This document shows positions 1 through 63,664 of a stretch of DNA of 64,000 nucleotides, piece by piece; the first letter of the stretch is position 1, and the number at the start of each line of letters is the position of its first letter. A model generated the notes under the pieces. That model was not told where the DNA came from and did not search any database. It saw only the letters and a program-made list of their open reading frames with translations. A program made the translations under genes and the position numbers. The DNA is from Octopus sinensis (taxonomy: Eukaryota), in NCBI RefSeq assembly GCF_006345805.1, contig NC_043004.1, forward strand, positions 98,890,001 to 98,954,000. The letters are read 5' to 3'.

Positions 1-1410
1 TTGTTGGTTGCGATGTCGAAGGTATTTCTCTTCTTCGTGATGTGATTGATGAGGGGGAAACAGTTTTTGTATTGTCCGCTGTTTTTCCTATCTTTTGGGT
101 TGAAGGTGGTGTGGGTAGCAGGGGTTTTCTTCCAGGTTTTGGGAGTGGTTGCTGTTGCTGTTGCCTATTTCTGATAGCAGTTGGGCACTCATATCTGAGA
201 TGTGCCTCACCGTTGCACAAATAGCATCGTGCCCTCCTGCCCTCCACCGCTACATACGATTTTTGGTCGTTTGCCAGTTGAACACTTGTTGGTAAATTGT
301 TTATTGCTTCTTGGGAGATTTAAAGCAATATTTTGAGCTTTTTACCAGTCCAGCTTTCCTCTGGAATGTCAGCTATTTCTAAAATATCTGCTTCTATATC
401 AAAGCAGATGGTCGATACCAGCCACTGGGTATCCACTACTGGAGGCACATTGTTTATTGTTACTTTCGTTACTCTGCGCCCAAGATAGCTAGGTGCCATT
501 GTTACCTGGTCTGTGCGCAGAGTAAGCATTGAAAACTTTTTTGTTAGTTCTTCCGTATGGAAGCGAACTTGCACGGTAGCAAATTTACTTCCCCAATTCA
601 CATAATTTCGGAATTTCCACACGGAAGAGAGGCACTTCTCAATCTTTTCTGTAGGTGGGCTTTCTAGTCTTTTTGTTTTGGTGTTGAGTATTCTGTAAAT
701 GATGGTCTTCTTTAGTGTTTCTTCTATGATGTTCCGTGGAATATGTAAATGTATTGTGTTGCCTTCTTTGGTGAGCAAGGATTTTGTGTCTTGTATTTGT
801 TGATGAGTAAATTTTAGGATTCTTCTTTTCGGTCGTATGGCTTCCGCAAAATTCGTCTTGTTTTTTGTGGAGGTGGTGGTGGTGATGTTTGTGGCTGAAT
901 CGTTTGTAGTAGTAGTAGATAACTGTGAAGTCGGTTGTTTACCAGTTTTTGAGTGGAGGTCGCGATGTTAGCGTTCATGCTTGCATTTTGTGCTTGTGAT
1001 GATTTCCCCCATTTCCCCTCCTTCATGAAATTGTGGTGAAAGCAGTATAGGGAAATCAATGTCGTAAGCGTTGCCAAGGAGGGTGTCGGTGTTGATGGTG
1101 GAATCATTGGTTGTCGTGACGAGGATTGGCCTTACGACCTTGGTTTTGTTGTTGTTGTTGGTAGTGGTATCGTTAGCAGAGGAAGCAGTTGTAGTAGCAG
1201 AAGCTGCTGTGGTGGTGGTGTCTGTGTTGATGGTGAAATCATTGGTGGCGGTGACTGTGGATGGCCTGGTTTTGTAGTTGTTGCTTTTGTTGATGCTGAT
1301 GGTGGTGGTGTGGTGGTGGTGGTGGTGGTGGTGGTGGTGTTAGTGGAGTTCAAACTGTCAGGTTCAGCGTTTGGTTGCAGGGAATCTTGCTCTTTTGTTT
1401 CGCCGTCATG
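1..1410 (-). pseudogene. Decayed ORF1 (gag-like, RRM-like region plus CCHC zinc knuckle) of a Tx1/L1-clade non-LTR retrotransposon; runs off the window start
   Basis: One minus-strand frame is open from ~967 to 1 except for a single TAA at 320-322. It reads ...RVTKVTINNVPPVVDTQWL...YVAVEGRRARCYLCNGEAHLRYEC..., with CX2CX4HX4C at 185-226. The upstream Thr/Pro-rich low-complexity part is frameshifted; candidate ATG at 1407-1409. Confidence 0.75.
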
Positions 1411-4512: not shown

Positions 4513-4557
4513 CATCATCATCGTTTAACATCCGTTTTCCATGCTGGCATGGGTTGG
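4513..4557 (-). mobile_element. Extreme 3' end of the RTE LINE, abutting the U2 copy
   Basis: Reverse complement reads CCAACCCATGCCAGCATGGAAAACGGATGTTAAACGATGATGATG, matching the RTE terminus at 61660-61715. Confidence 0.85.
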
Positions 4558-4579
4558 GCGGGAAACGGTTGGGTGGGAG

Positions 4580-4762
4580 ATGGGCTGAATCCTGGAAGCA
4601 TTGCAATATCAGAACAACTTGTGGCAAAGGTGAAGCAAGCCCTTAACACTTCGCCTCGTTCTAAAAATCAGTTTAATATCGATGGCCCCAAATAGGGACC
4701 GTATTAGATATTAAGCTGATAAGAACAGATTCTACACTTTGATCTTAGCCAAAAGGCCGAGA
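4580..4762 (-). pseudogene. U2: U2 snRNA retropseudogene (nt ~7 to 3' end)
   Basis: Minus strand reads TCTCGGCCTTTTGGCTAAGATCAAAGTGTAGAATCTGTTCTTATCAGCTTAATATCT, the conserved U2 5' domain. It continues through an Sm-like site AAACTGATTTTTAGAA and 3' stem-loops (GCTTGCT...ATTGCA...CCAGGA). It has an extra A in GATCAAAG, and the branch-point pairing sequence GTAGTA is changed to GTAGAA. Confidence 0.9.
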
Positions 4763-4906
4763 TAGATAGATAGATATAGATATAGATAGATAAATAGGTA
4801 GATAGATAGATAGATATAGATATAGATATAGATAGATAAATAGATAGATATAGATATAGATAGGTAGAGAAATAGATAGATATAGATAGATAGATATAGA
4901 TAGATA

Positions 4907-5113
4907 ATCATCATCATCATTGTTCGACCGTGGTCGAGACAATGGAATTTACTATGTTACGCCAGACTTCACGGTCCATCATAGCATTACAGAGGTCCTG
5001 TTGCTGGATGCCTGTATCCCTGGAGATTACATCAGGGTAGGAGAGTGTGCGCCCTCTGGTATTGCGAGTAGATGGCTTCCAGAGGAGGAGAGTAGAAATT
5101 ACTTCTTTTTCAG
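4907..5113 (-). mobile_element. 5'-truncated RTE-type LINE: ORF2 C-terminus directly followed by a (GAT)n tail, inside a (GATA)n tract
   Basis: LLLWKPSTRNTRGRTLSYPDVISRDTG...AMMDREVWRNIV* resembles RTE-clade ORF2 C-termini; the stop codon lies in the tail. Confidence 0.75.
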
Positions 5114-5593
5114 ATAGATAGATAAACAGATAGATAGATAGACAGATATAAATAAATAGGTAGATAGATAGATAGATAGATAGATAGATATAGATAAATA
5201 GGTAGACATAGATAGATAGATAATTCACATATATATATGATAGATATGCATATGCTTGTGTGTGCATGTATATTTGCATTTGTGTGTTTGTGTGTGTGCA
5301 TGTGGCTGTGTCTGTGTGTCCAAAAACATTCTGTCGATAGATTCTATTAAATTTTGGAAATAAAATGTATTTCAATAAACATCGACATTATAATCATCTA
5401 ATGTGAGTATATATTTCGGTGGCATCAAATTTTTATATCTGATAGCATTTCCAATATCATTTATGTAAATAATAAGTGAAAATGGATTTAATACAGTACC
5501 CTGGGGGTGACGGGTAGCAATGCTACTGATTGTTGCTGGTTCACCAAATTTATTTACTTCTTTGTTAATTCCATTTATCTTTCTGCTGACTTA

Positions 5594-6600: not shown

Positions 6601-7061
6601 AAGTGGGTAACTTATATGCCAAGGAAACCTTGCTTAAGTTTCCGTCTATCAAATCCACTCACAAGAATTCGGTCGGCCTGAGGCTTATGTTTCATATCTG
6701 CATAAGCTGGGGCACTGCCTGAAACGGCTTAGTCGAACATATTGACCCCATTATATATATTTTAAAAACCTGGTGTTTTAATTCTATTGGTGTTGATTTC
6801 CAAACCACTAAGTGACATGATTGTAAGCAAGTCCTGGGGTCGGTTTTGCTTGACTAAAGACGGTGCTCCACCATGGCCACAGTCACATGACTGAAGCAAG
6901 TAAAAGAGTAAAGGAGTATATCATCATCACCATCATTTAACATCCGTTTTCCACACACATAAATACATATCCATGTATATGTTATATATATTTTGCTGCG
7001 TTTTGGGAGCATCATTACATCAATAATAATTAATACAGAAACAAAGTATGTTTTATATATA

Positions 7062-9908: not shown

Positions 9909-10545
9909 CGATAGATCGATAGATAGATACATACATACATAGACAGATACATAGAGAGAGAGACACATAAATAGACATATATATATATAGATAGATAGAT
10001 AGATAGGTAGATGGATAGATAGATAGTCATATATATATGTAGGTATGTATGTATGCATATATATGAATATGTACACACATGCACACACACACATTCATAC
10101 ACACACACGCACACATATTCATACACACATATATGTATATATGAAAAAAAAACAGCGTTTTATCAATATAGTTCATTTAATTTCCTTTCATATATTTACT
10201 TTATATTCTTCACGCATTTCGCAATTTTATTTCTTTATTTAATTAAATGTTTATTTATTTCCTGTAAATCAAAATTCCCAGAAATATATATGCCTGATAT
10301 TGAAGTTATTTCAATTCATATTTTCTGATCCCCCCTTATATTTTTTTTATTATTTTAAAACCTTTACTTAAATTAATAAAAAAAAATTTACTCTGATGGT
10401 ATATATATGTAGACATATTTTGGTTAAAAAGTGTATCTCTGCATGTATGTGTGTAAATATACATATATATATATATTATATATATTATATATATATATGC
10501 ATATATATATATCTGTGTGTGTGTGTGTGCATGTATAATATGTAT

Positions 10546-10577
<32 letters not shown>

Positions 10578-10846
10578 TTACACACATACATGCAGATATA
10601 TATATATATATATAATATATATATATATAATATATATATAAGCATATATAGTACATATATATATTATTATATAATATATATATATATATATGCATATATA
10701 TATATCTGGTGTGTGTGTGTGCATGTATATATATGTATGTATATATATATATATATATATATGTATATTTACACATACATGCAGATATAATAAATATTAT
10801 ATATATAATATATATATATATATAAATATATTATAAGCATATATAA

Positions 10847-10894
<48 letters not shown>

Positions 10895-11133
10895 GCCTGA
10901 TGAAGCCTTCTGGCTTCACAGACCCCAGTAGAACCGTCCAACCCATGCTAGCATGGAAAACGGACGCTAAATGATGATGATATATATATGTGTGTGTGTG
11001 TGTATGTATGTAATACACATGAATTTTTACACATAAATGCGCATACATGTCTCTATCAATATACATATTTCCAAACAAAAGTTCACACAAGCATGCACAT
11101 TCACACATGCATCTTTACACAAACGCCCGCACG

Positions 11134-14904: not shown

Positions 14905-15175
14905 CATCATCATCTTCATCATCATCATCATTTAACATCCCTTGTCCATGCTGGCATGGGTTGTATGGTCTGACCAGAGCAAGTAAGCTGAAAGGCTGCA
15001 CCAGACTCCAATCTGATTTGGCATGGTTTCTACAGCTTGATGCCTTCCTAATGCCAACCACTCCGAGAGTGTAATAGCTGCTTTTACATGTCACCGGTAT
15101 GGGTGCCAGTCACAGGATACCAGTATCTGCCATGAATACAATTTCACTTGGCTTGACGGGCTTTCTTCTAAAGGG
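14905..15175 (-). mobile_element. RTE-LINE 3' UTR fragment
   Basis: (CAT)n-TTTAACATCC...CATGCTGGCATGGGTTG...GATGCCTTCCTAATGCCAACCACTCCGAGAGTG. Confidence 0.75.
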
Positions 15176-15278
15176 ATGGGTCTTGGAAACACACACAGAT
15201 GTATACATTCACATCAAGTAACACTTGTACACAAACATGCAGCACATCTGATCAGATATATATATATATATATATATA

Positions 15279-15811: not shown

Positions 15812-16044
15812 GGTGCACCCGCCCTGCCCACCCCCACCACCAATACCGGATATCTCTTTGCTCCATCTATACCGGATGTCACTTCTCCCACCACCATTAT
15901 AGGTGTCTACTCTTCGAACCCCTCTTCAACACGCTATTTCACCATGCATTACCCCTCTCTTGATATCCTACGTCTACTTGCCTAGAACCTGTCATCATTC
16001 TCTGAACCACCCCTCTCCACTGGTGCTCCCCTATATTTCTGCAC

Positions 16045-16302
16045 CCCCCCACATAAAAAAAGCACCATCCGAACGTGGCCGATGCCAGACCCCTCTGGCA
16101 CCTGTGCAGGTGGCACGTAAAAAACACCCACTACACTCGCGGAGTGGTTGGCGTTAGGAAGGGCATCCAGCTGTAGAAACACTGCCAGACTAGACTGGAG
16201 CCTGGGGCAGTCCCTAGCTCCCCAGACCCCGGTCGAAACCATCCAACCCGTGCTAGCGCGGAAAAACGGGACGTTAAACGATGATATGATGATGATGATG
16301 AT
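16045..16302 (+). mobile_element. RTE-LINE 3' UTR with (GAT)n tail
   Basis: Closely matches 61480-61715. Confidence 0.85.
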
Positions 16303-17082: not shown

Positions 17083-17198
17083 GTTTGGTTTGAATTATAT
17101 AAATGCTATCATCACTTTCATCATCGTCATCATCATCATCATCATCATCATCACCATCATCACCACCACCATCATCATCATCATCATCGTCATCGTCG

Positions 17199-17234
<36 letters not shown>

Positions 17235-17935
17235 CCATCATCATCATCAGCACCACCACCACCAGCATCCTCATCATCATCCTCATCTGATTTGCTTTCC
17301 TCTCTTCTTCTCTGTATCATTGCCGTTTACCATCATCGTCAACAACAACACCACTTACATAATAATGCTTGTAGCCATCAATACACAGATGTACTGGATT
17401 ATACTTATGCATCATCAGATAGTTGCCTCTTACCAACACATTCAAGCATATGTTCACACGCACATACACACACACACACAGAGTGTGGCTTCAAGGTAAT
17501 ATGGATGACATCATCATCTTCATAAATATCGTTATCATCATCAGTGTTGTCTTTCCTACTCTTGTCATCGCCATCCCCATCATCATCACCATTTTCGTTA
17601 TCACCACCACAACCTCCATCGTCATCACCACCACAACCACCACCACCACCACCAAGCCACTGCCACCACCACCATCATCGTCATCGCCATCATCATCACC
17701 ACCACAACCGCCACCACCACAACCACCACCACCACAACCGCCACCACCACAACCGCCACCACCACAACCGCCACCACCACCATTATCGTCATCACCATCA
17801 TCATCACCACCACCACCAGCACCACCATCACCACCACCACCGCCACCACCATCATCAGTACCATCATCATCAGCATCAATATTATCGTTGTCATCATTGT
17901 TGTCATCATCAGCAACATCATCATCATCAACAAAA
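17083..17935. repeat. Compound (CAT)n/(CAC)n trinucleotide tracts
   Basis: Direct inspection. Confidence 0.95.
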
Positions 17936-18675: not shown

Positions 18676-18895
18676 GCGTGTCATCATCATCATCATCATC
18701 ATCATCATCGTCGTCGTCATCATCATCATCATCGTCGTCGTCGTCATCATCATCATCATCATCGTCGTCATCGTCATCATCATCATCATCATCATCGTCA
18801 TCGTCATCATCATCATCACCGTCGTCGTCGTCGTCATCATCACCATCATCATCATCGTCATCATCGTCATCATTATCTCCATCATCATCATCATT
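18676..18895. repeat. (CAT/CGT)n tract forming the expanded tail of a minus-strand RTE 3' end (to ~19010)
   Basis: Tract is followed by TTTAATGTC...CTGGCATGGGTTG. Confidence 0.8.
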
Positions 18896-21678: not shown

Positions 21679-22310
21679 ACACCATAACATCATTATAAAA
21701 AAAATCACCATCACCACCACCACCACCACCTCAGTATTACTGTATTTATTCCCAACCCACTTCTACCCACCTCATAACTTCATGATTCACCCAGATGCAC
21801 TACCACTATTTCTAGCACTTTCTGTCTCCCGCCATAACACTTTCACCCCTTCTTCAAAAATGTGAGCTACCTTTTAACTTTTCAATACTCAGAGACCGAT
21901 TCTTCTTTGCTTTCTTTCTCTGATACTTTTACTCCTCGTTTCCTAAGTAAAGACATGTCTCTTGTGATTCAAAGTCTTGCAAGTTGAATGGTAGCCACAC
22001 TAGTATTGGTGCCTTGTAAAATGCATCTAATGCCTACTGTGAAGTGGTTGGCATTAGGAAAGACATTCAGCAGAGGAATCCATGCCAAAATTAGACATTG
22101 GAGCATGATGCATCTCTTGGACTAGTCAGATCCTATCTAACTTCCAGCCCATACAAATGTGGAACCTGATCATGAAATGATGATGGTAATGACGATGATG
22201 ACAATGGCGGTGGTGGCGGTGTTGGTGGTGTTGGTGGTGGTGGTGGTGGTGAAAATGATGGTGATGATGATGGTGATGATGATGATGGTGATGATGATGA
22301 TATGATGATG

Positions 22311-22342
<32 letters not shown>

Positions 22343-22364
22343 GGTGATGATGATGGTGATGATG

Positions 22365-22396
<32 letters not shown>

Positions 22397-30265: not shown

Positions 30266-30504
30266 TAAAAATCAATGTTCCGGGAAAGAAGGATTGAAGG
30301 AAATTTTTCCCGGCAGGGCTTGGTTCTATAAGGATGAGAGATAAGTAGGGTTAGCAATCTATTGTTAATGCATGTGGGCGGGCGGGCTTGGAGGTGGGTA
30401 AGCAAATGGTTAGAGAGTTGGACTTCTGATTACAAAATCATGGGTTCAAATCCTTGATTGAATATTGCTTTGTGCCATTGAACAGGGCATTTTATTTCAA
30501 GCTG

Positions 30505-31233
30505 TTCGACTCATACTGCGTCCACATACTCCCTCCACAACACTGATATCAAGAAATCCTCTTGCGAGCGTGACGTAGGCATCACTGTCAGCAGTGATTT
30601 GCATTGGACAAAGCATATCTCTAAAATTGTCAAGAAGGCCGAGGGTGTCTTGGCATCACTCAGCAAGACTTTTGTTAGCCGCTCTCCAGCCATCTATTTA
30701 AAACTGTATACAGCTATGGTACGACCACACTTGGAATTCGCATCATCAGTTTGGAATCCCTATCTTGCTCAGAACATTGACCTCCTGGAATCTGTCCAGA
30801 GACGTGCAACCAAACGCATACCCTCCATCAGACACCTACCATATTCTGAGCGCCTTGTTTCCCTGGGCATGGATTCACTGAAGCTCCGGCGTCTGGCGAC
30901 AGACTTGGTAAACACCCACAAGGTTATCAACCACCTCACCAACAACAACACTGAACACCTTTTTGATCTCCATGTGTCTAACACACGTGGACATGCCTAC
31001 AAAGTCAGAAAACAGCACAGCTCCCATGACTTTCGGAAACATTTTTTCACGCTCAGGGTTGCTGAAGCGTGGAATAAACTGCCTGCATCAGTTGTTGACT
31101 GCCATGACACTGCATCCTTTAAGGCCCTCATGCTTCCCGAAATCCGTCGAAACTACACCTGATTATATATACACTTTAGATGAGTTGTAGTGCACCTGAG
31201 CACTGTACACAATTATTATTATTATTATTATTA
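30505..31233 (+). mobile_element. 5'-truncated CR1-clade LINE: uninterrupted RT C-terminus, short 3' UTR and (ATT)n tail
   Basis: Frame ...ERDVGITVSSDLHWTKH...LYTAMVRPHLEFASSVWNPY...LESVQRRATKRI...LRRLATDL...TRGH...FFTLRVAEAWNKLP ends at 31162; ATTATTATT tail follows. Confidence 0.9.
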
Positions 31234-38924: not shown

Positions 38925-39555
<631 letters not shown>

Positions 39556-43681: not shown

Positions 43682-43913
43682 GACAAACTGTGGGTGACAC
43701 AGCTGGGTATCAGGATAGGAACTATGGTTTGACAACCAATGGAGTTGAAGAGGCCCAAGGGAGCTCCACAGCTGGCTTAGAAGTAGTGAATATGAATCCT
43801 AGACTGGATATGGCCTGAAAGTAGTGGATATGAACCAAAGAGTGGTCCCTGTGGAAAAGGCTAATAGCTTAGAAGATAGGAGAATATAAAAAATCATATC
43901 TAGAGTAGGTGAA

Positions 43914-44370
43914 GTGGATGATTGTAATGGAAGTACTAGAAATATTAGTTGTGATTGTGCAAGATACAGGGTCTGTCCACTTGACTGTGATTGTAAACAT
44001 AAAAATATCGTATACAGATGTAAGATTACCTCAGTGAATAGAGAATATTTCTATATAGGAGCTAGCTCATGTTATATTAAGCAGAGAATTGCCAATCATT
44101 TAAGTTCATTTAGAAATAGGGGCAAAATGAATACTACCAGATTTAGTAAACTAATTTGGGCACTTAAAGATAGTAACAAAGTATTTCAATTACTTGAGAA
44201 ATTATTAGTAAAGCAAAACCTTATAGAATAGGCAATAATAGATGTAACTTTTTTGTGGAGAAAATGTACCAAATTTTCTTTTCTAAATATACTATTATCA
44301 ATGCTAGACAGGAATAGGCTTTGACATGTCCACATTGTATTAAACATACATTTAAACAATTTAAAGAAAC
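43914..44370 (+). pseudogene. Penelope-like element GIY-YIG endonuclease C-terminus, decayed
   Basis: CDC...CPLDCDCKHKNIVYRCKI...FYIGAS...KQRIANHLSSF...TRFSKLIWALKD, then a frameshifted GNNRCN...INARQE..LTCPH. Confidence 0.8.
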
Positions 44371-54386: not shown

Positions 54387-55124
54387 CATCCAAGCTAAAT
54401 TGGATGTGCTGTTGATGACAATTCTGACTGTTATGAACACCCTGTGAATCATCTTATTTAGATGACAATTGTTAAAAATCACAGACTATATCAGCTGATG
54501 AAATTGTTGTCTGCATCAATGGATAGCACTACTGCATCATGTTATTTCACCGTAAAATGAAGATCATCAGCAGTAGCTAGCTGAACACCAAATGCCAGAT
54601 CAAAATTAACTGAAATCAATATGGTATTGAGCCATTGAGCTGTGAATAAATTAGCTATTACTGATAGAAGCAGATTTTGACATGAATATTAATTAACACA
54701 TCCAATTTAGGATGGATGTACAAATTAATATTCTCTGCATGCAGCAGAGGTTAGACAAAATCCCAGAAAAGAGAGGTGAACACAGGAATCTTGGTTCCTG
54801 AATGACCTGTGTTTAAAAGAATTATTTCATCTCCAATGCCCTTCTCGAAGCATGTACCATGGACGCAATATCCTCACCTCTCACCAAACAAATAAGTAGC
54901 CAACCAGTCAAAAACAAATTGGCGGCATGAGTAAGATACACAGATGGCAAGACCTTTCAACAGGCATATTTTATTGGTTGCAGTTCTGCTTTGGGTTATA
55001 GGAATCTTAAACTATGATGTACATTGCATTAACCTCACATCTCAAATGAAGATCATCTTTGCTCTTATTAATGTAACTATTTGCTATATTTGCTTCTAGC
55101 ATACCACTACAGTAATCCCTCACC

Positions 55125-55380
55125 TATTGCCGGTGGCACGTACAAAGCACCAACCAATTGTGGCCGTTGCCAGCCTCCCCTGGCACCTGTGCCGGCGGCA
55201 CGTAAAAAGCACCCACTACAATCACGGAGTGGTTGGCGTTAGGAAGGGCATCAATTGTAGAAACACTGCCAGATCAGACTGGAGCCTGGTACAGCCTCCT
55301 GGCTTCCCAGACCCCAGTTGAATCGTCCAACCCATGCTAGCATGGAAAGCGGACATTAAACGATGATGATGATGATGATG
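55125..55380 (+). mobile_element. RTE-LINE 3' UTR with (GAT)n tail
   Basis: Matches 61480-61715. Confidence 0.85.
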
Positions 55381-55574
55381 ATCGCGGGTGTTACATTCCA
55401 AAATCTTATGTGGTAGGTGAAAGTATGCAAAGTAGAAACAGTACTGTACTGCATATACTTTTATCCTTTTCATATTTTGTATGTACTTATTTTATTATAA
55501 ATGCAAAACAACATCATAACCATGCCTCCTGAGTTTCGTTTTCCATATAATAAGTGTGATTCTTTGTTTACACT

Positions 55575-60334: not shown

Positions 60335-60740
60335 ATCATCATCATCCTTTAACTTAACATTCGTTTTCCATGCTGGCATGGGTTAGATGGTTTGACTGTG
60401 GTCTGGAGAGCCAGAAGGCTGTACCAGGCTCCAATCTGATCTGGCAAGGTTTCTACAGCTGGATGCCCTTCCTAATGCCAATCACTCCGAGAGTGTAGTG
60501 GGTGTTTTTTACATGCCACCAGCATGGGAGCTAGTCAGGTGGGTCTGGTAGTGATCACATTCGGATACTGCTTTTTACTTGCCACTGGCACAAGAGCCAG
60601 TCAGGGGTTACTGGCATCAGCCACGATCGGATGGTGGTTCTTACATGCCACCAGCATAGAAGCCAGTCTGGAAGGCCTAGCATCAATCACATGCTTTTTA
60701 TGTCAGGGCCTACTTGCATCACCCATGTTCAGTTGGTGCT
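60335..60740 (-). mobile_element. Diverged RTE 3' UTR including the internal ~60-bp repeats
   Basis: (CAT)n...CATGCTGGCATGGGTTAG...GGATGCCCTTCCTAATGCCAA...repeated TTACATGCCACCAGCA. Confidence 0.75.
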
Positions 60741-61047: not shown

Positions 61048-61715
61048 TGTGAGAATGGATGAAGATAGGTGTGTGAAAAAGTGCTACACCCTGGCAGTTG
61101 AGGGGACCTGTGGAAGAGGTAGACCCAGAAAAACCTGGGTCGAGGTGGTGAAGCATGACCTTCGAACTCTAGGTCTCACCAAGGAAATGACCAGAGACCG
61201 AGACCTATGGAAGTATGCTGTGCGTGAGAAGACCCGGCAAGACCAGTGAGAACAATCAAAATCAAATCATATATCAGAAAGCAGGGGTTAAGTGACCCAT
61301 CCGTTCGTGTCCGCTGTCAGCCTCGTCTGGCACCCGTGCCGGTGACACGTAAAAGCACCGTCCGCTCGTGGCCGTTTGCCAGCTCTGTCTGGCAACCGTG
61401 TCGGTGGCACGTAAAAGCACCATCCGTTCGTGTCCGTTGCCAGCATCGCCTGGCCCCGTGCCGGTGACACGTAAAAGCACCATCCGTTCGTGGCCGTTCG
61501 CCAGCTCTGTCTGGCACCTGTGCAGGTGGCACGTAAAAAACACCCACTACACTCGCGGAGTGGTTGGCGTTAGGAAGGGCATCCAGCCGTAGAAACACTG
61601 CCAGATCTGACTGGGCCTGACGAAGCCTTCCAGCTTCACAGACCCCAGTTGACCCGTCCAACCCATGCTAGCATGGAAAGCGGACGCTAAACGATGATGA
61701 TGATGATGATGATGA
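61048..61715 (+). mobile_element. 5'-truncated RTE-clade LINE: ORF2 C-terminus, 3' UTR with four ~61-bp repeats, and (GAT)n tail
   Basis: RMDEDRCVKK...GTCGRGRPRKTWVEVVKHDL...DRDLWK* (61049-61249), repeats at ~61297-61540, tail at 61693-61715. Confidence 0.88.
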
Positions 61716-61875
61716 TATATATATAACGGAGTAAACACATAAATGTGAAATAAGGTGGAAAAAAGAGTACTCAAATGCCAGTGGTAGAGTAATATGCTTT
61801 ATTTAAAGCAGCAGAAAATTCAACAAAACCTGTTACTCTGAGTTTCCCGTTGCTGTTCATCGGACAGTTTTTGCT
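61716..61875 (-). mobile_element. Short PLE pseudo-LTR-like fragment between (TA)n tracts with hammerhead-like motif (61830-61867)
   Basis: Reverse complement CTGT-CCGATGA-acagcaacgg-GAAA-CTCAGAG-TA^ACAG; stem II does not pair well. Confidence 0.5.
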
Positions 61876-63210: not shown

Positions 63211-63664
63211 ACATTATAGGATAATAACTCTACCTATGTGACATAAACAGATGGGATAACATCTTTTACAGACATATGATGACATAGAAATGGTATTAGA
63301 TCTGAAACATAGTGAAAGCACAACCATCTTACATCCACAATCTCTCCTATCATCATTACTACCATTAGCAATGTCATCTTGACCATTATCATCATTACCA
63401 TCGCCAACCGCCGCGGCCGCCACCACCGCCATCATCATCATCATCATCATCATCATCAGTATAATCAGTATTGAAATTGGTTTGGTCTGAAAGCAGCAGA
63501 ATCACAAATAGTTGGCACCAGAGTCAAGACAGATGCCAATGCTGTAGGTTTACAGTTGCTAAAGTGATTTATTGTAACATTTGACCCAACTAAGTAATCT
63601 GAATATTAAATTCACTTCGATAATGATTATATACCAAGCACTGACTGTATCATTGAGATTGTAA

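What the first reader, a model, noticed from the sequence alone, without database searches (positions are those of the whole stretch)
4513..4762. U2 snRNA-RTE LINE chimeric retrocopy
Seen: on the minus strand a nearly full-length U2 (from nt ~7) is followed after a ~22-nt linker, in the same orientation, by the last ~45 nt of the RTE element with its (GAT)n tail. The U2 has a lesion in the branch-point pairing motif, so it is unlikely to be functional. Established: snRNA-LINE chimeras (mainly U6-L1) are known in vertebrates and arise by template switching or RNA ligation. Inference: an analogous U2-RTE chimera in a mollusc, showing that this RTE machinery retrotransposes cellular RNAs. No clear target-site duplication is visible.
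Basis: partly seen in the sequence, partly recalled or inferred. Interest (0 to 1): 0.7.

Follow-up and report, generated by a model that had tools for sequence, protein, structure and literature searches.

The report
U2 snRNA copy fused to SINE/RTE tail
An octopus genome window holds a dead copy of the U2 splicing RNA joined at its 3' end to the last 49 bases of an abundant RTE-type SINE. It most likely formed when a retrotransposon's reverse transcriptase jumped from the SINE RNA onto U2 RNA, an interesting but not unprecedented kind of event.

Summary
Rfam finds one U2 snRNA in the window, on the minus strand at 4575-4769 (148.5 bits). Real U2 similarity starts at U2 nt 7 (window 4762), next to a (TATC)n microsatellite. 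A 13-nt linker follows (up to about 18 nt), then 49 nt (4513-4561) matching the 3' tail of a SINE-like repeat: a hairpin plus (GAT)n. That repeat has 11 other copies in the window and at least 7 in 20.7 kb of Octopus sinensis.

- The tail donor is a SINE family of at most about 320 bp with an RTE-like tail, not an RTE LINE found here. The adjacent RTE LINE fragment (4907-5110) has a different 3' end.
- The extra A in AUCAAAGUG and the C in CAGCUU occur in intact U2 genes and are not lesions. Three real lesions remain: GUAGUA>GUAGAA, CUGAUA>CUAAUA and Sm AUUUUUG>AUUUUUA.

Best explanation (about 0.62): a single template-switch chimeric retrocopy made by RTE-type machinery. Chance adjacency of an independent tail insertion is about 0.002.

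Not excluded:
- a copy of an uncharacterised U-snRNA-derived "SINE/U" family (about 0.2)
- two separate insertions (about 0.12)

There is no target-site duplication. I could not reach an empty site or a second copy with these tools.

The parts
4575..4762 (-). U2 snRNA-derived segment, from U2 nt 7 to about the natural 3' end. Lesions: U>A at 4731 in the branch-point recognition sequence, G>A at 4705 in stem IIa, G>A at 4662 in the Sm site. Seven non-canonical pairs in the Rfam alignment.
   Evidence: Rfam RF00004, 148.5 bits. Compared with two intact U2 genes of the same sequence type, L007 and L008. Sequence read.
4562..4574 (-). Linker ACCCAACCGTTTC between the U2 model end and the start of tail homology. 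Origin unresolved: pre-U2 3' extension, extra nucleotides at the jump, or slippage.
   Evidence: No significant similarity to the SINE upstream region (p=0.33). An 11/15 direct quasi-repeat and a 10/12 inverted match to neighbouring tail segments are about what chance gives.
4523..4561 (-). 5'-truncated unique part of the SINE/RTE-type tail. Includes the conserved hairpin CCATG/CATGG (4539-4552).
   Evidence: Matches 11 other window copies and at least 7 O. sinensis copies. Hairpin is 95.7% paired across 15 copies, with one compensatory pair.
4513..4522 (-). (GAT)3G trinucleotide-repeat terminus, the 3' end of the retrocopy.
   Evidence: The same repeat ends all SINE copies and the RTE LINE fragment.
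4763..4906 (.). (TATC)n microsatellite abutting the 5' end of the U2 part. It replaces any snRNA promoter and hides the 5' junction.
4907..5110 (-). Separate 5'-truncated RTE-clade LINE 3' fragment. ORF end is ...DREVWRNIVNSIVSTTVEQ*, followed by (ATG)n. Its tail differs from the one joined to U2. It is flanked on both sides by (TATC)n.
   Evidence: 80% nt identity over 199 nt to the 3' end of L004, whose 818-aa ORF has Exo_endo_phos_2 and RVT_1 domains.
5111..5250 (.). Upstream half of the (TATC)n microsatellite that the RTE fragment interrupts.

Best explanation
The locus is a dead chimeric retrocopy made in one retrotransposition event.

Proposed steps:
1. An RTE-type reverse transcriptase nicked the target DNA.
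2. It primed on the (GAU)n end of an RNA of the abundant octopus SINE family, or of its partner RTE LINE.
3. It copied the (GAU)n repeat and the stem-loop it recognises, 49 nt in all.
4. It then switched template onto the 3' end of a U2 snRNA, possibly a 3'-extended pre-U2, which would account for the 13-18 nt linker.
5. It copied U2 up to about nt 7, and the cDNA was joined to the chromosome beside or inside a (TATC)n microsatellite.

The copy has no snRNA promoter, lacks the first 6 nt, and has mutations in the branch-point recognition sequence, stem IIa and the Sm site. It therefore does nothing today.

Shown: the parts, their order and orientation, that the tail belongs to the SINE family, and that the U2 copy is defective.

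Inferred: the template switch, the identity of the enzyme, the source of the linker, and that it was a single event.
For: - There is one U2 in the window, and its natural 3' end faces the tail in the same orientation.
- The tail is 49 nt, 48/49 to a tail consensus resolved towards this copy, and 45/46 to an O. sinensis copy.
- It contains the whole conserved hairpin plus (GAT)n.
- 5'-truncated tails of 30-140 nt are common in this family.
- Tail density is 11 per 64 kb. An independent same-strand insertion whose 5' end lands within 20 nt of the U2 end therefore has a probability of about 0.002 (my calculation).
- The U2 part differs from intact U2 genes of the same sequence type at only 3 invariant positions in about 100 nt. 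The tail differs by about 2% from its nearest copy. The two parts could be the same age.
- The SINE family looks recently active: a 156/156 identical copy sits at another locus in O. sinensis.
- RTE LINEs are reported as active in octopus (PMC9115989, PMC13282606).
- Template-switch snRNA chimeras are established for L1 and for a fungal LINE (PMC4494074 discussion, PMC4476161, PMC2104539).
Against: - No target-site duplication is present. Other SINE copies here also show none that I could see, so this is uninformative rather than contrary.
- The 5' junction lies in a microsatellite and cannot be read.
- No second U2-tail or other cellular-RNA-tail chimera was found in the window or in 41 kb of fetched O. 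sinensis and O. vulgaris DNA.
- No orthologous or paralogous empty site was available.
- No RTE LINE carrying this exact tail was seen.
- U2 stops at nt 7, whereas the snRNA part of L1 chimeras is, as I recall and did not check here, usually full length.
Confidence: 0.62

Rival explanations
1. The locus is one copy of an amplified U2-headed, RTE-mobilised short retroposon family, like SINEU. The family would have been founded by a template-switch event like the one above and then propagated from a master copy.
For: - The structure is a small-RNA head plus a LINE-type tail that keeps the full recognition hairpin and (GAT)n, which is the architecture of a SINE.
- The automated O. vulgaris repeat annotation lists a class 'SINE U' (1 family, 369,490 bp, 19 recent insertions) and 'U-L1' (52,753 bp) (PMC13282606 main text and supplement).
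- SINEU families with U2 heads exist in crocodilians (PMC4494074).
Against: - There is no second copy in the 64-kb window or the two fetched octopus loci (about 41 kb), although the tRNA-less SINE family itself is dense there.
- The 'SINE U' recent insertions average about 730 bp, unlike this roughly 250-bp unit (my arithmetic). That class is uncurated and may simply be snRNA gene repeats.
- A U2 head carries no internal promoter.
- A search of translated junction ORFs against 5.8 billion proteins found nothing.
Confidence: 0.2
2. Two unrelated events produced the locus. A U2 pseudogene, either a tailless retrocopy or a decayed or duplicated gene, later received a heavily 5'-truncated SINE tail just downstream by chance, or because both were drawn to the same microsatellite-rich target.
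For: - Short 5'-truncated tails of about 30 nt and about 93 nt occur alone elsewhere (copies ending at 6925 and 10984).
- Insertions of this family cluster at microsatellites (copies at 39212, 10984 and 61702), and another RTE fragment sits 150 nt upstream. The site may be an insertion hotspot.
- There is no TSD around the whole unit.
- A 13-18 nt non-homologous linker separates the parts.
Against: - The probability of same-strand adjacency within 20 nt is about 0.002 at the observed tail density.
- The tail starts just past the natural U2 3' end, as expected for a template jump.
- There is no promoter or 3' flank context of a real U2 gene.
- The two parts show similarly low divergence.
Confidence: 0.12

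Closest known systems
U6 (and rarer U1, U2, U4, U5) snRNA-L1/Alu chimeric retrocopies of mammals (Buzdin 2002 and Garcia-Perez 2007 as cited in PMC4494074; PMC4476161; PMC6789731)
   Same: An snRNA copy sits 5' of a 5'-truncated retroelement 3' part in the same orientation. The junction is at the snRNA 3' end. The copy is non-functional. The event is explained by template switching, or by RNA ligation before reverse transcription.
   Different: The tail here is a specific hairpin plus (GAT)n of an RTE-type SINE, not a poly(A) L1 or Alu end. The host is a cephalopod. U2 is truncated at nt 7. No TSD is present. A 13-18 nt linker separates the parts. RtcB-type ligation needs a 2',3'-cyclic phosphate, which U6 has and U2 is not known to have (my background knowledge).
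SINEU families of crocodilians (Kojima 2015, PMC4494074)
   Same: A U2-derived 5' part is fused to a retroposon 3' part. Template switching onto U2 is the proposed origin.
   Different: SINEU are multi-copy families mobilised by Tx1-Mar LINEs, with a preference for Mariner-N4 targets. Here there is one copy, an RTE-type tail, and a microsatellite context. Family status was not tested.
Bipartite and tripartite chimeric pseudogenes of Magnaporthe grisea made by the MGL LINE (PMC2104539)
   Same: They show that template jumps onto small cellular RNAs occur with LINEs other than mammalian L1.
   Different: The host is a fungus, and the LINE clade and partner RNAs are different.
Ceph-SINEs and other SINEs with RTE-derived tails (PMC5786205; Malik and Eickbush 1998, as cited in PMC9115989)
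   Same: A small-RNA head is joined to an RTE-derived 3' tail, which is the structure that lets RTE machinery mobilise a non-coding RNA. The window is full of such SINEs.
   Different: Their heads are tRNA-type with internal Pol III promoters, and they are amplified. The U2 head here has no internal promoter, and no amplification was seen.

Membership tests
U2 spliceosomal snRNA (Rfam RF00004), functional gene | Covariance-model score above the gathering threshold | tested here: met
   148.5 bits against a threshold of 46.
U2 spliceosomal snRNA (Rfam RF00004), functional gene | Intact 5' end AUCGCU and branch-point recognition sequence GUAGUA | tested here: not met
   The first 6 nt are replaced by (TATC)n. 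GUAGUA is GUAGAA, changed at 4731. The intact genes L007 and L008 have both features.
U2 spliceosomal snRNA (Rfam RF00004), functional gene | Sm site AUUUUUG and intact stems | tested here: not met
   The Sm site reads AUUUUUA (4662). Stem IIa has G>A at 4705. Seven non-canonical pairs are present, against 1-2 in intact genes.
U2 spliceosomal snRNA (Rfam RF00004), functional gene | Upstream snRNA promoter (PSE) and downstream 3' box | tested here: inconclusive
   The 144 bp upstream are pure (TATC)n, followed by an RTE fragment, so no promoter context is plausible. No cephalopod PSE or 3'-box consensus was available to scan with.
snRNA-retroelement chimeric retrocopy (template-switch type) | The snRNA lies 5' of a 5'-truncated retroelement 3' end, in the same orientation, with the junction at the snRNA 3' end | tested here: met
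   U2 ends at about 4575-4580 and tail homology starts at 4561, both on the minus strand.
snRNA-retroelement chimeric retrocopy (template-switch type) | The 3' terminus is the one used by the mobilising LINE | tested here: met
   (GAT)n and the conserved hairpin are shared with 11 window copies and at least 7 O. sinensis copies. The RTE LINE fragment ends in the same trinucleotide repeat.
snRNA-retroelement chimeric retrocopy (template-switch type) | A target-site duplication flanks the whole chimera | tested here: not met
   No direct repeat lies across the unit. The 5' flank is a microsatellite. I saw no obvious TSD at the other SINE copies inspected, so the test has little power.
snRNA-retroelement chimeric retrocopy (template-switch type) | An empty orthologous site lacks both parts together | not testable with these tools
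   No octopus genome could be searched by DNA. Exact-protein look-ups of window ORFs failed. The immediate flank is unique, so no paralogous empty site exists.
SINEU (snRNA-headed SINE family) | A U1- or U2-derived head | tested here: met
SINEU (snRNA-headed SINE family) | A multi-copy family with a shared junction and shared diagnostic changes | tested here: inconclusive
   There is no second copy in the 64-kb window or the two fetched octopus loci (about 41 kb). That sample is far too small. An uncurated 'SINE U' class exists in O. vulgaris.
SINEU (snRNA-headed SINE family) | Mobilised by Tx1-Mar LINEs with a Mariner-N4 target preference | tested here: not met
   The tail is RTE-type (GAT)n and the target context is a microsatellite.
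RTE-clade LINE 3' tail | The 3' end is shared with an autonomous RTE LINE (APE + RT ORF running into a short-repeat tail) | tested here: inconclusive
   No LINE with this exact tail is in the window. The SINE's last 148 nt form one open frame...SRTVQPMLAWKTDVKR*, ending in the tail's TGA. They align weakly (p=0.014) to the RTE fragment ending ...STTVEQ*. That fragment's relative L004 has APE and RT domains.

The most novel reading that the evidence does not exclude
The locus is a member of a so far uncharacterised U2-headed retroposon family in octopuses that RTE machinery mobilises. It would be the real content of the automated 'SINE U' class. That would be the first SINEU-like family outside vertebrates and the first with an RTE partner, and it would catch a Pol II snRNA being turned into a SINE head.
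Probability: 0.18. Interest if true: 0.55.

Novelty: new member of a known kind. Interest (0 to 1): 0.35.

Why it matters
LINEs that recognise a specific 3' tail, such as RTE, are thought to create SINEs by jumping from their own tail onto a small cellular RNA. Such founding events are rarely seen outside mammalian L1. A U2-tail chimera in an octopus would be a natural snapshot of that step, in a genome where RTE elements and their SINEs are abundant, look recently active, and are discussed in connection with brain biology.

It would also give a practical marker. U-snRNA copies with RTE tails could be used to date and quantify trans-mobilisation by RTE machinery in cephalopods.

As a single dead copy it has no functional consequence for the animal.

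Tried and rejected
1. I searched 5.8 billion predicted proteins with the 64-aa ORF spanning the junction, hoping to find paralogous or orthologous chimeras. There were no candidates.

2. I scanned JGI metagenome contigs for a U2 5' motif followed 161-221 nt later by AAYGATGATGAT. The only result was two contigs of one plant-type genuine U2 gene with a chance GAT run in its 3' flank.

3. Exact-protein look-ups of window ORFs, meant to locate the window or its orthologue, found nothing on record.

4. Proteins related to the neighbouring RTE fragment gave two non-octopus contigs, L003 and L004. They lack this SINE, so they confirm only that the fragment is an RTE.

5. I looked for a paralogous empty site. 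The 380 bp downstream are unique in all the DNA held.

6. I considered a tripartite chimera of RTE fragment, U2 and tail. I rejected it because the RTE fragment ends in its own (ATG)n tail, is separated from U2 by 144 bp of microsatellite, and has the same microsatellite on its other side. It is a separate insertion.

7. I tested whether the linker is a slipped or snapped-back copy of the tail. The 11/15 direct and 10/12 inverted matches are about what chance gives in this region.

8. I tested whether tail homology extends into the linker. It does not (p=0.33).

9. A literature search for the U2 sequence string found nothing. The question was settled instead with two intact U2 genes found as eukaryotic contamination in MAG contigs.

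Full report
**What is there**

On the minus strand the region reads, 5' to 3':
- (TATC)n, 5250-5111
- an RTE LINE 3' fragment ending in (ATG)n, 5110-4907
- (TATC)n, 4906-4763
- a U2-derived segment, 4762-4575
- a short linker, 4574-4562
- 39 nt of retroposon tail, 4561-4523
- GATGATGATG, 4522-4513
- unique DNA

Rfam's U2 model gives the only hit above gathering score in the 64-kb window: 4575-4769, 148.5 bits, E 1.4e-30. A permissive scan adds only spurious microRNA hits on microsatellites, and no other snRNA or tRNA piece. ARAGORN finds no tRNA.

**How damaged is the U2?**

I looked for intact U2 genes carrying the same unusual AUCAAAGUG. Two turned up as eukaryotic contamination in MAG contigs: L007 at 167 bits and L008 at 173 bits. 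Both have a full 5' end, GUAGUA and an intact Sm site. They also carry CAGCUUAAUAUCUGAUACGG.

The extra A and the C in CAGCUU are therefore normal variants of this U2 type. They are not decay. Against these genes, the first roughly 100 nt of the window copy differ at three invariant positions:
- GUAGUA>GUAGAA (4731)
- CUGAUA>CUAAUA, which breaks stem IIa (4705)
- Sm AUUUUUG>AUUUUUA (4662)

The Rfam alignment marks seven non-canonical pairs, against one or two in the intact genes. Six 5' nucleotides are missing, and 144 bp of microsatellite sit where a promoter should be. The copy is dead. It is not very old, at about 3% change at conserved positions.

**What is the tail?**

The 39-mer before the GAT run has a second match in the window at up to 3 mismatches. 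A 20-mer from the tail matches six further sites (seven with this one). Shuffles give none. BLAST of the region against the window finds 11 other tails at 82-93% identity.

Extending those copies shows a unit of at most about 320 bp with internal subrepeats of about 60 bp and no coding capacity for a LINE. It is a SINE-like family. It is not an RTE LINE.

Local alignment to a tail consensus, whose three ambiguous positions I set to this copy's own bases, gives 49 nt (48/49) at 4513-4561. The 45 nt upstream of that show no similarity beyond shuffles (p=0.33). The linker is thus 13 nt after the Rfam model end, or up to about 18 nt if mature U2 ends a few bases after stem-loop IV.

The 49 nt include a hairpin, CCATG/CATGG. 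It is paired in 95.7% of cells across 15 copies and has one compensatory A-U to G-C change (modest support, 14 of 500 shuffles reach it).

**Is the tail really RTE-type?**

The neighbouring fragment 4907-5110 is 80% identical over 199 nt to the 3' end of contig L004. L004's 818-aa ORF has endonuclease and reverse-transcriptase domains. The ORF of the window fragment runs into its (ATG)n tail (...STTVEQ*). That arrangement matches what I recall of RTE-clade LINEs. No clade-level test was run.

This tail differs from the one joined to U2. Even so, the last 148 nt of the SINE consensus form one open frame...SRTVQPMLAWKTDVKR*, which stops in the TGA of its own tail. They align weakly to the RTE fragment (p=0.014). 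The SINE 3' part therefore most likely derives from the 3' coding end of another RTE LINE. That is an inference, because no such LINE was seen.

**Organism**

An RT-like ORF in the window (30482-31159) has its best matches in Octopus sinensis and O. vulgaris proteins. A 20.7-kb O. sinensis locus, L005, carries at least 7 copies of the same tail. One is 45/46 identical to the U2-linked tail, and one SINE copy is 156/156 identical to window 61557-61712. The window is octopus DNA, and the SINE family looks recently active.

Published work reports active RTE LINEs in octopus (PMC9115989), and SINEs at about 11.7% of the O. vulgaris genome (PMC13282606).

**Mechanism**

The arrangement is what template switching during target-primed reverse transcription predicts:
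- a tail with its recognition hairpin and repeat
- truncated on its 5' side
- joined in the same orientation to the natural 3' end of an abundant nuclear RNA

Independent adjacency is unlikely. With 11 tails per 64 kb, the chance that a same-strand tail begins within 20 nt of the U2 end is about 0.002 (my calculation). The two parts show similar low divergence.

The linker could be the 3' extension of a pre-U2, extra nucleotides at the jump, or slippage. Its weak direct (11/15) and inverted (10/12) resemblance to nearby tail segments is no more than chance.

Ligation before reverse transcription, as shown for U6 (PMC6789731), seems less likely. U2 is not known to carry the cyclic phosphate end that reaction uses; this is my background knowledge and was not tested.

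**What is missing**

- There is no target-site duplication.
- The 5' junction is buried in microsatellite.
- The downstream 380 bp are unique, so no paralogous empty site exists.
- I could not search an octopus genome by DNA. The junction-ORF protein search was empty. The metagenome scan returned only a plant-type U2 gene. Exact look-ups of window ORFs failed.

Single event versus two events, and one-off versus family, therefore remain open. The automated O. vulgaris annotation lists a 'SINE U' class (369,490 bp, one family, 19 recent insertions averaging about 730 bp) and 'U-L1'. This keeps the family reading alive at about 0.2.

**Comparison and verdict**

The closest known things are:
- U6/U2-L1 or Alu chimeras of mammals
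- MGL chimeras of Magnaporthe
- crocodilian SINEU, which have U2 heads but Tx1 partners (PMC4494074, PMC4476161, PMC2104539)

This locus works like the first group but uses an RTE-type SINE tail in a cephalopod. I file it as a new member of a known kind, at moderate interest (0.35). The interest would rise if genome-wide searches show recurrent U-snRNA capture or an amplified family.

Noticed in passing
window 55040-55385, 61380-61716, 16000-16302, 60337-60650, 14920-15230 and others: An abundant SINE-like family of at most about 320 bp with a variable number of roughly 60-bp internal subrepeats (GGCACCTGTGCCGGTGGCACGTAAAAAGCACC...). No tRNA-like head is detected by ARAGORN or Rfam. One copy (61557-61712) is 156/156 identical to a copy at another locus in O. 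sinensis (L005 3975-4130), which suggests very recent activity.
   Followed up: partly
SINE consensus; for example window 55225-55371: The last 148 nt of the SINE read as one uninterrupted frame (...SRTVQPMLAWKTDVKR*) that stops in the TGA of its own (GAT)n tail. The SINE 3' part appears to have been lifted from the C-terminal coding end of an RTE LINE.
   Followed up: partly
window 39060-39420, 10700-11060, 61700-61730, 4763-5250: 5'-truncated SINE or RTE copies sit inside or beside microsatellites, (AT)n, (ATAC)n or (TATC)n, often with the same repeat on both sides. Either the RTE machinery prefers such targets, or RTE ends seed microsatellites, as reported for Lepidoptera (Tay 2010, cited in PMC9115989).
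   Followed up: no
window 17129-17248, 18683-18892, 22275-22396, 63431-63457: Long (GAT)n / (ATC)n arrays of 100-200 bp, far longer than ordinary SINE tails. They may be expanded retroposon tails.
   Followed up: no
window 43890-44228 (+): An ORF with a weak GIY-YIG nuclease domain match (E 1.9e-4, just under the Pfam cut-off). It is probably a Penelope-like element remnant.
   Followed up: no
window 2-319 (-) and 30482-31159 (+): A CCHC zinc-knuckle gag-like ORF runs off the window start. Separately, there is an RT-C-terminal-like ORF whose best relatives are annotated O. sinensis and O. vulgaris 'uncharacterized' or jockey-like proteins (71-79% identity).
   Followed up: partly
L007 1-3241 (JAIXRC010000034.1, labelled Cryomorphaceae MAG) and L008 (Bacteroidota MAG): Contigs filed under bacterial MAGs carry intact eukaryotic U2 snRNA genes. 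L007 also has 10 tRNA genes in 3.2 kb. This is eukaryotic contamination of the bins.
   Followed up: partly
window, many sites (for example 10030-10102, 10711-10779): Dozens of sub-threshold Rfam 'mir-297', 'mir-466' and 'mir-3149' matches fall on (TA)n/(CA)n-type microsatellites. These are artefacts of low-complexity sequence.
   Followed up: yes
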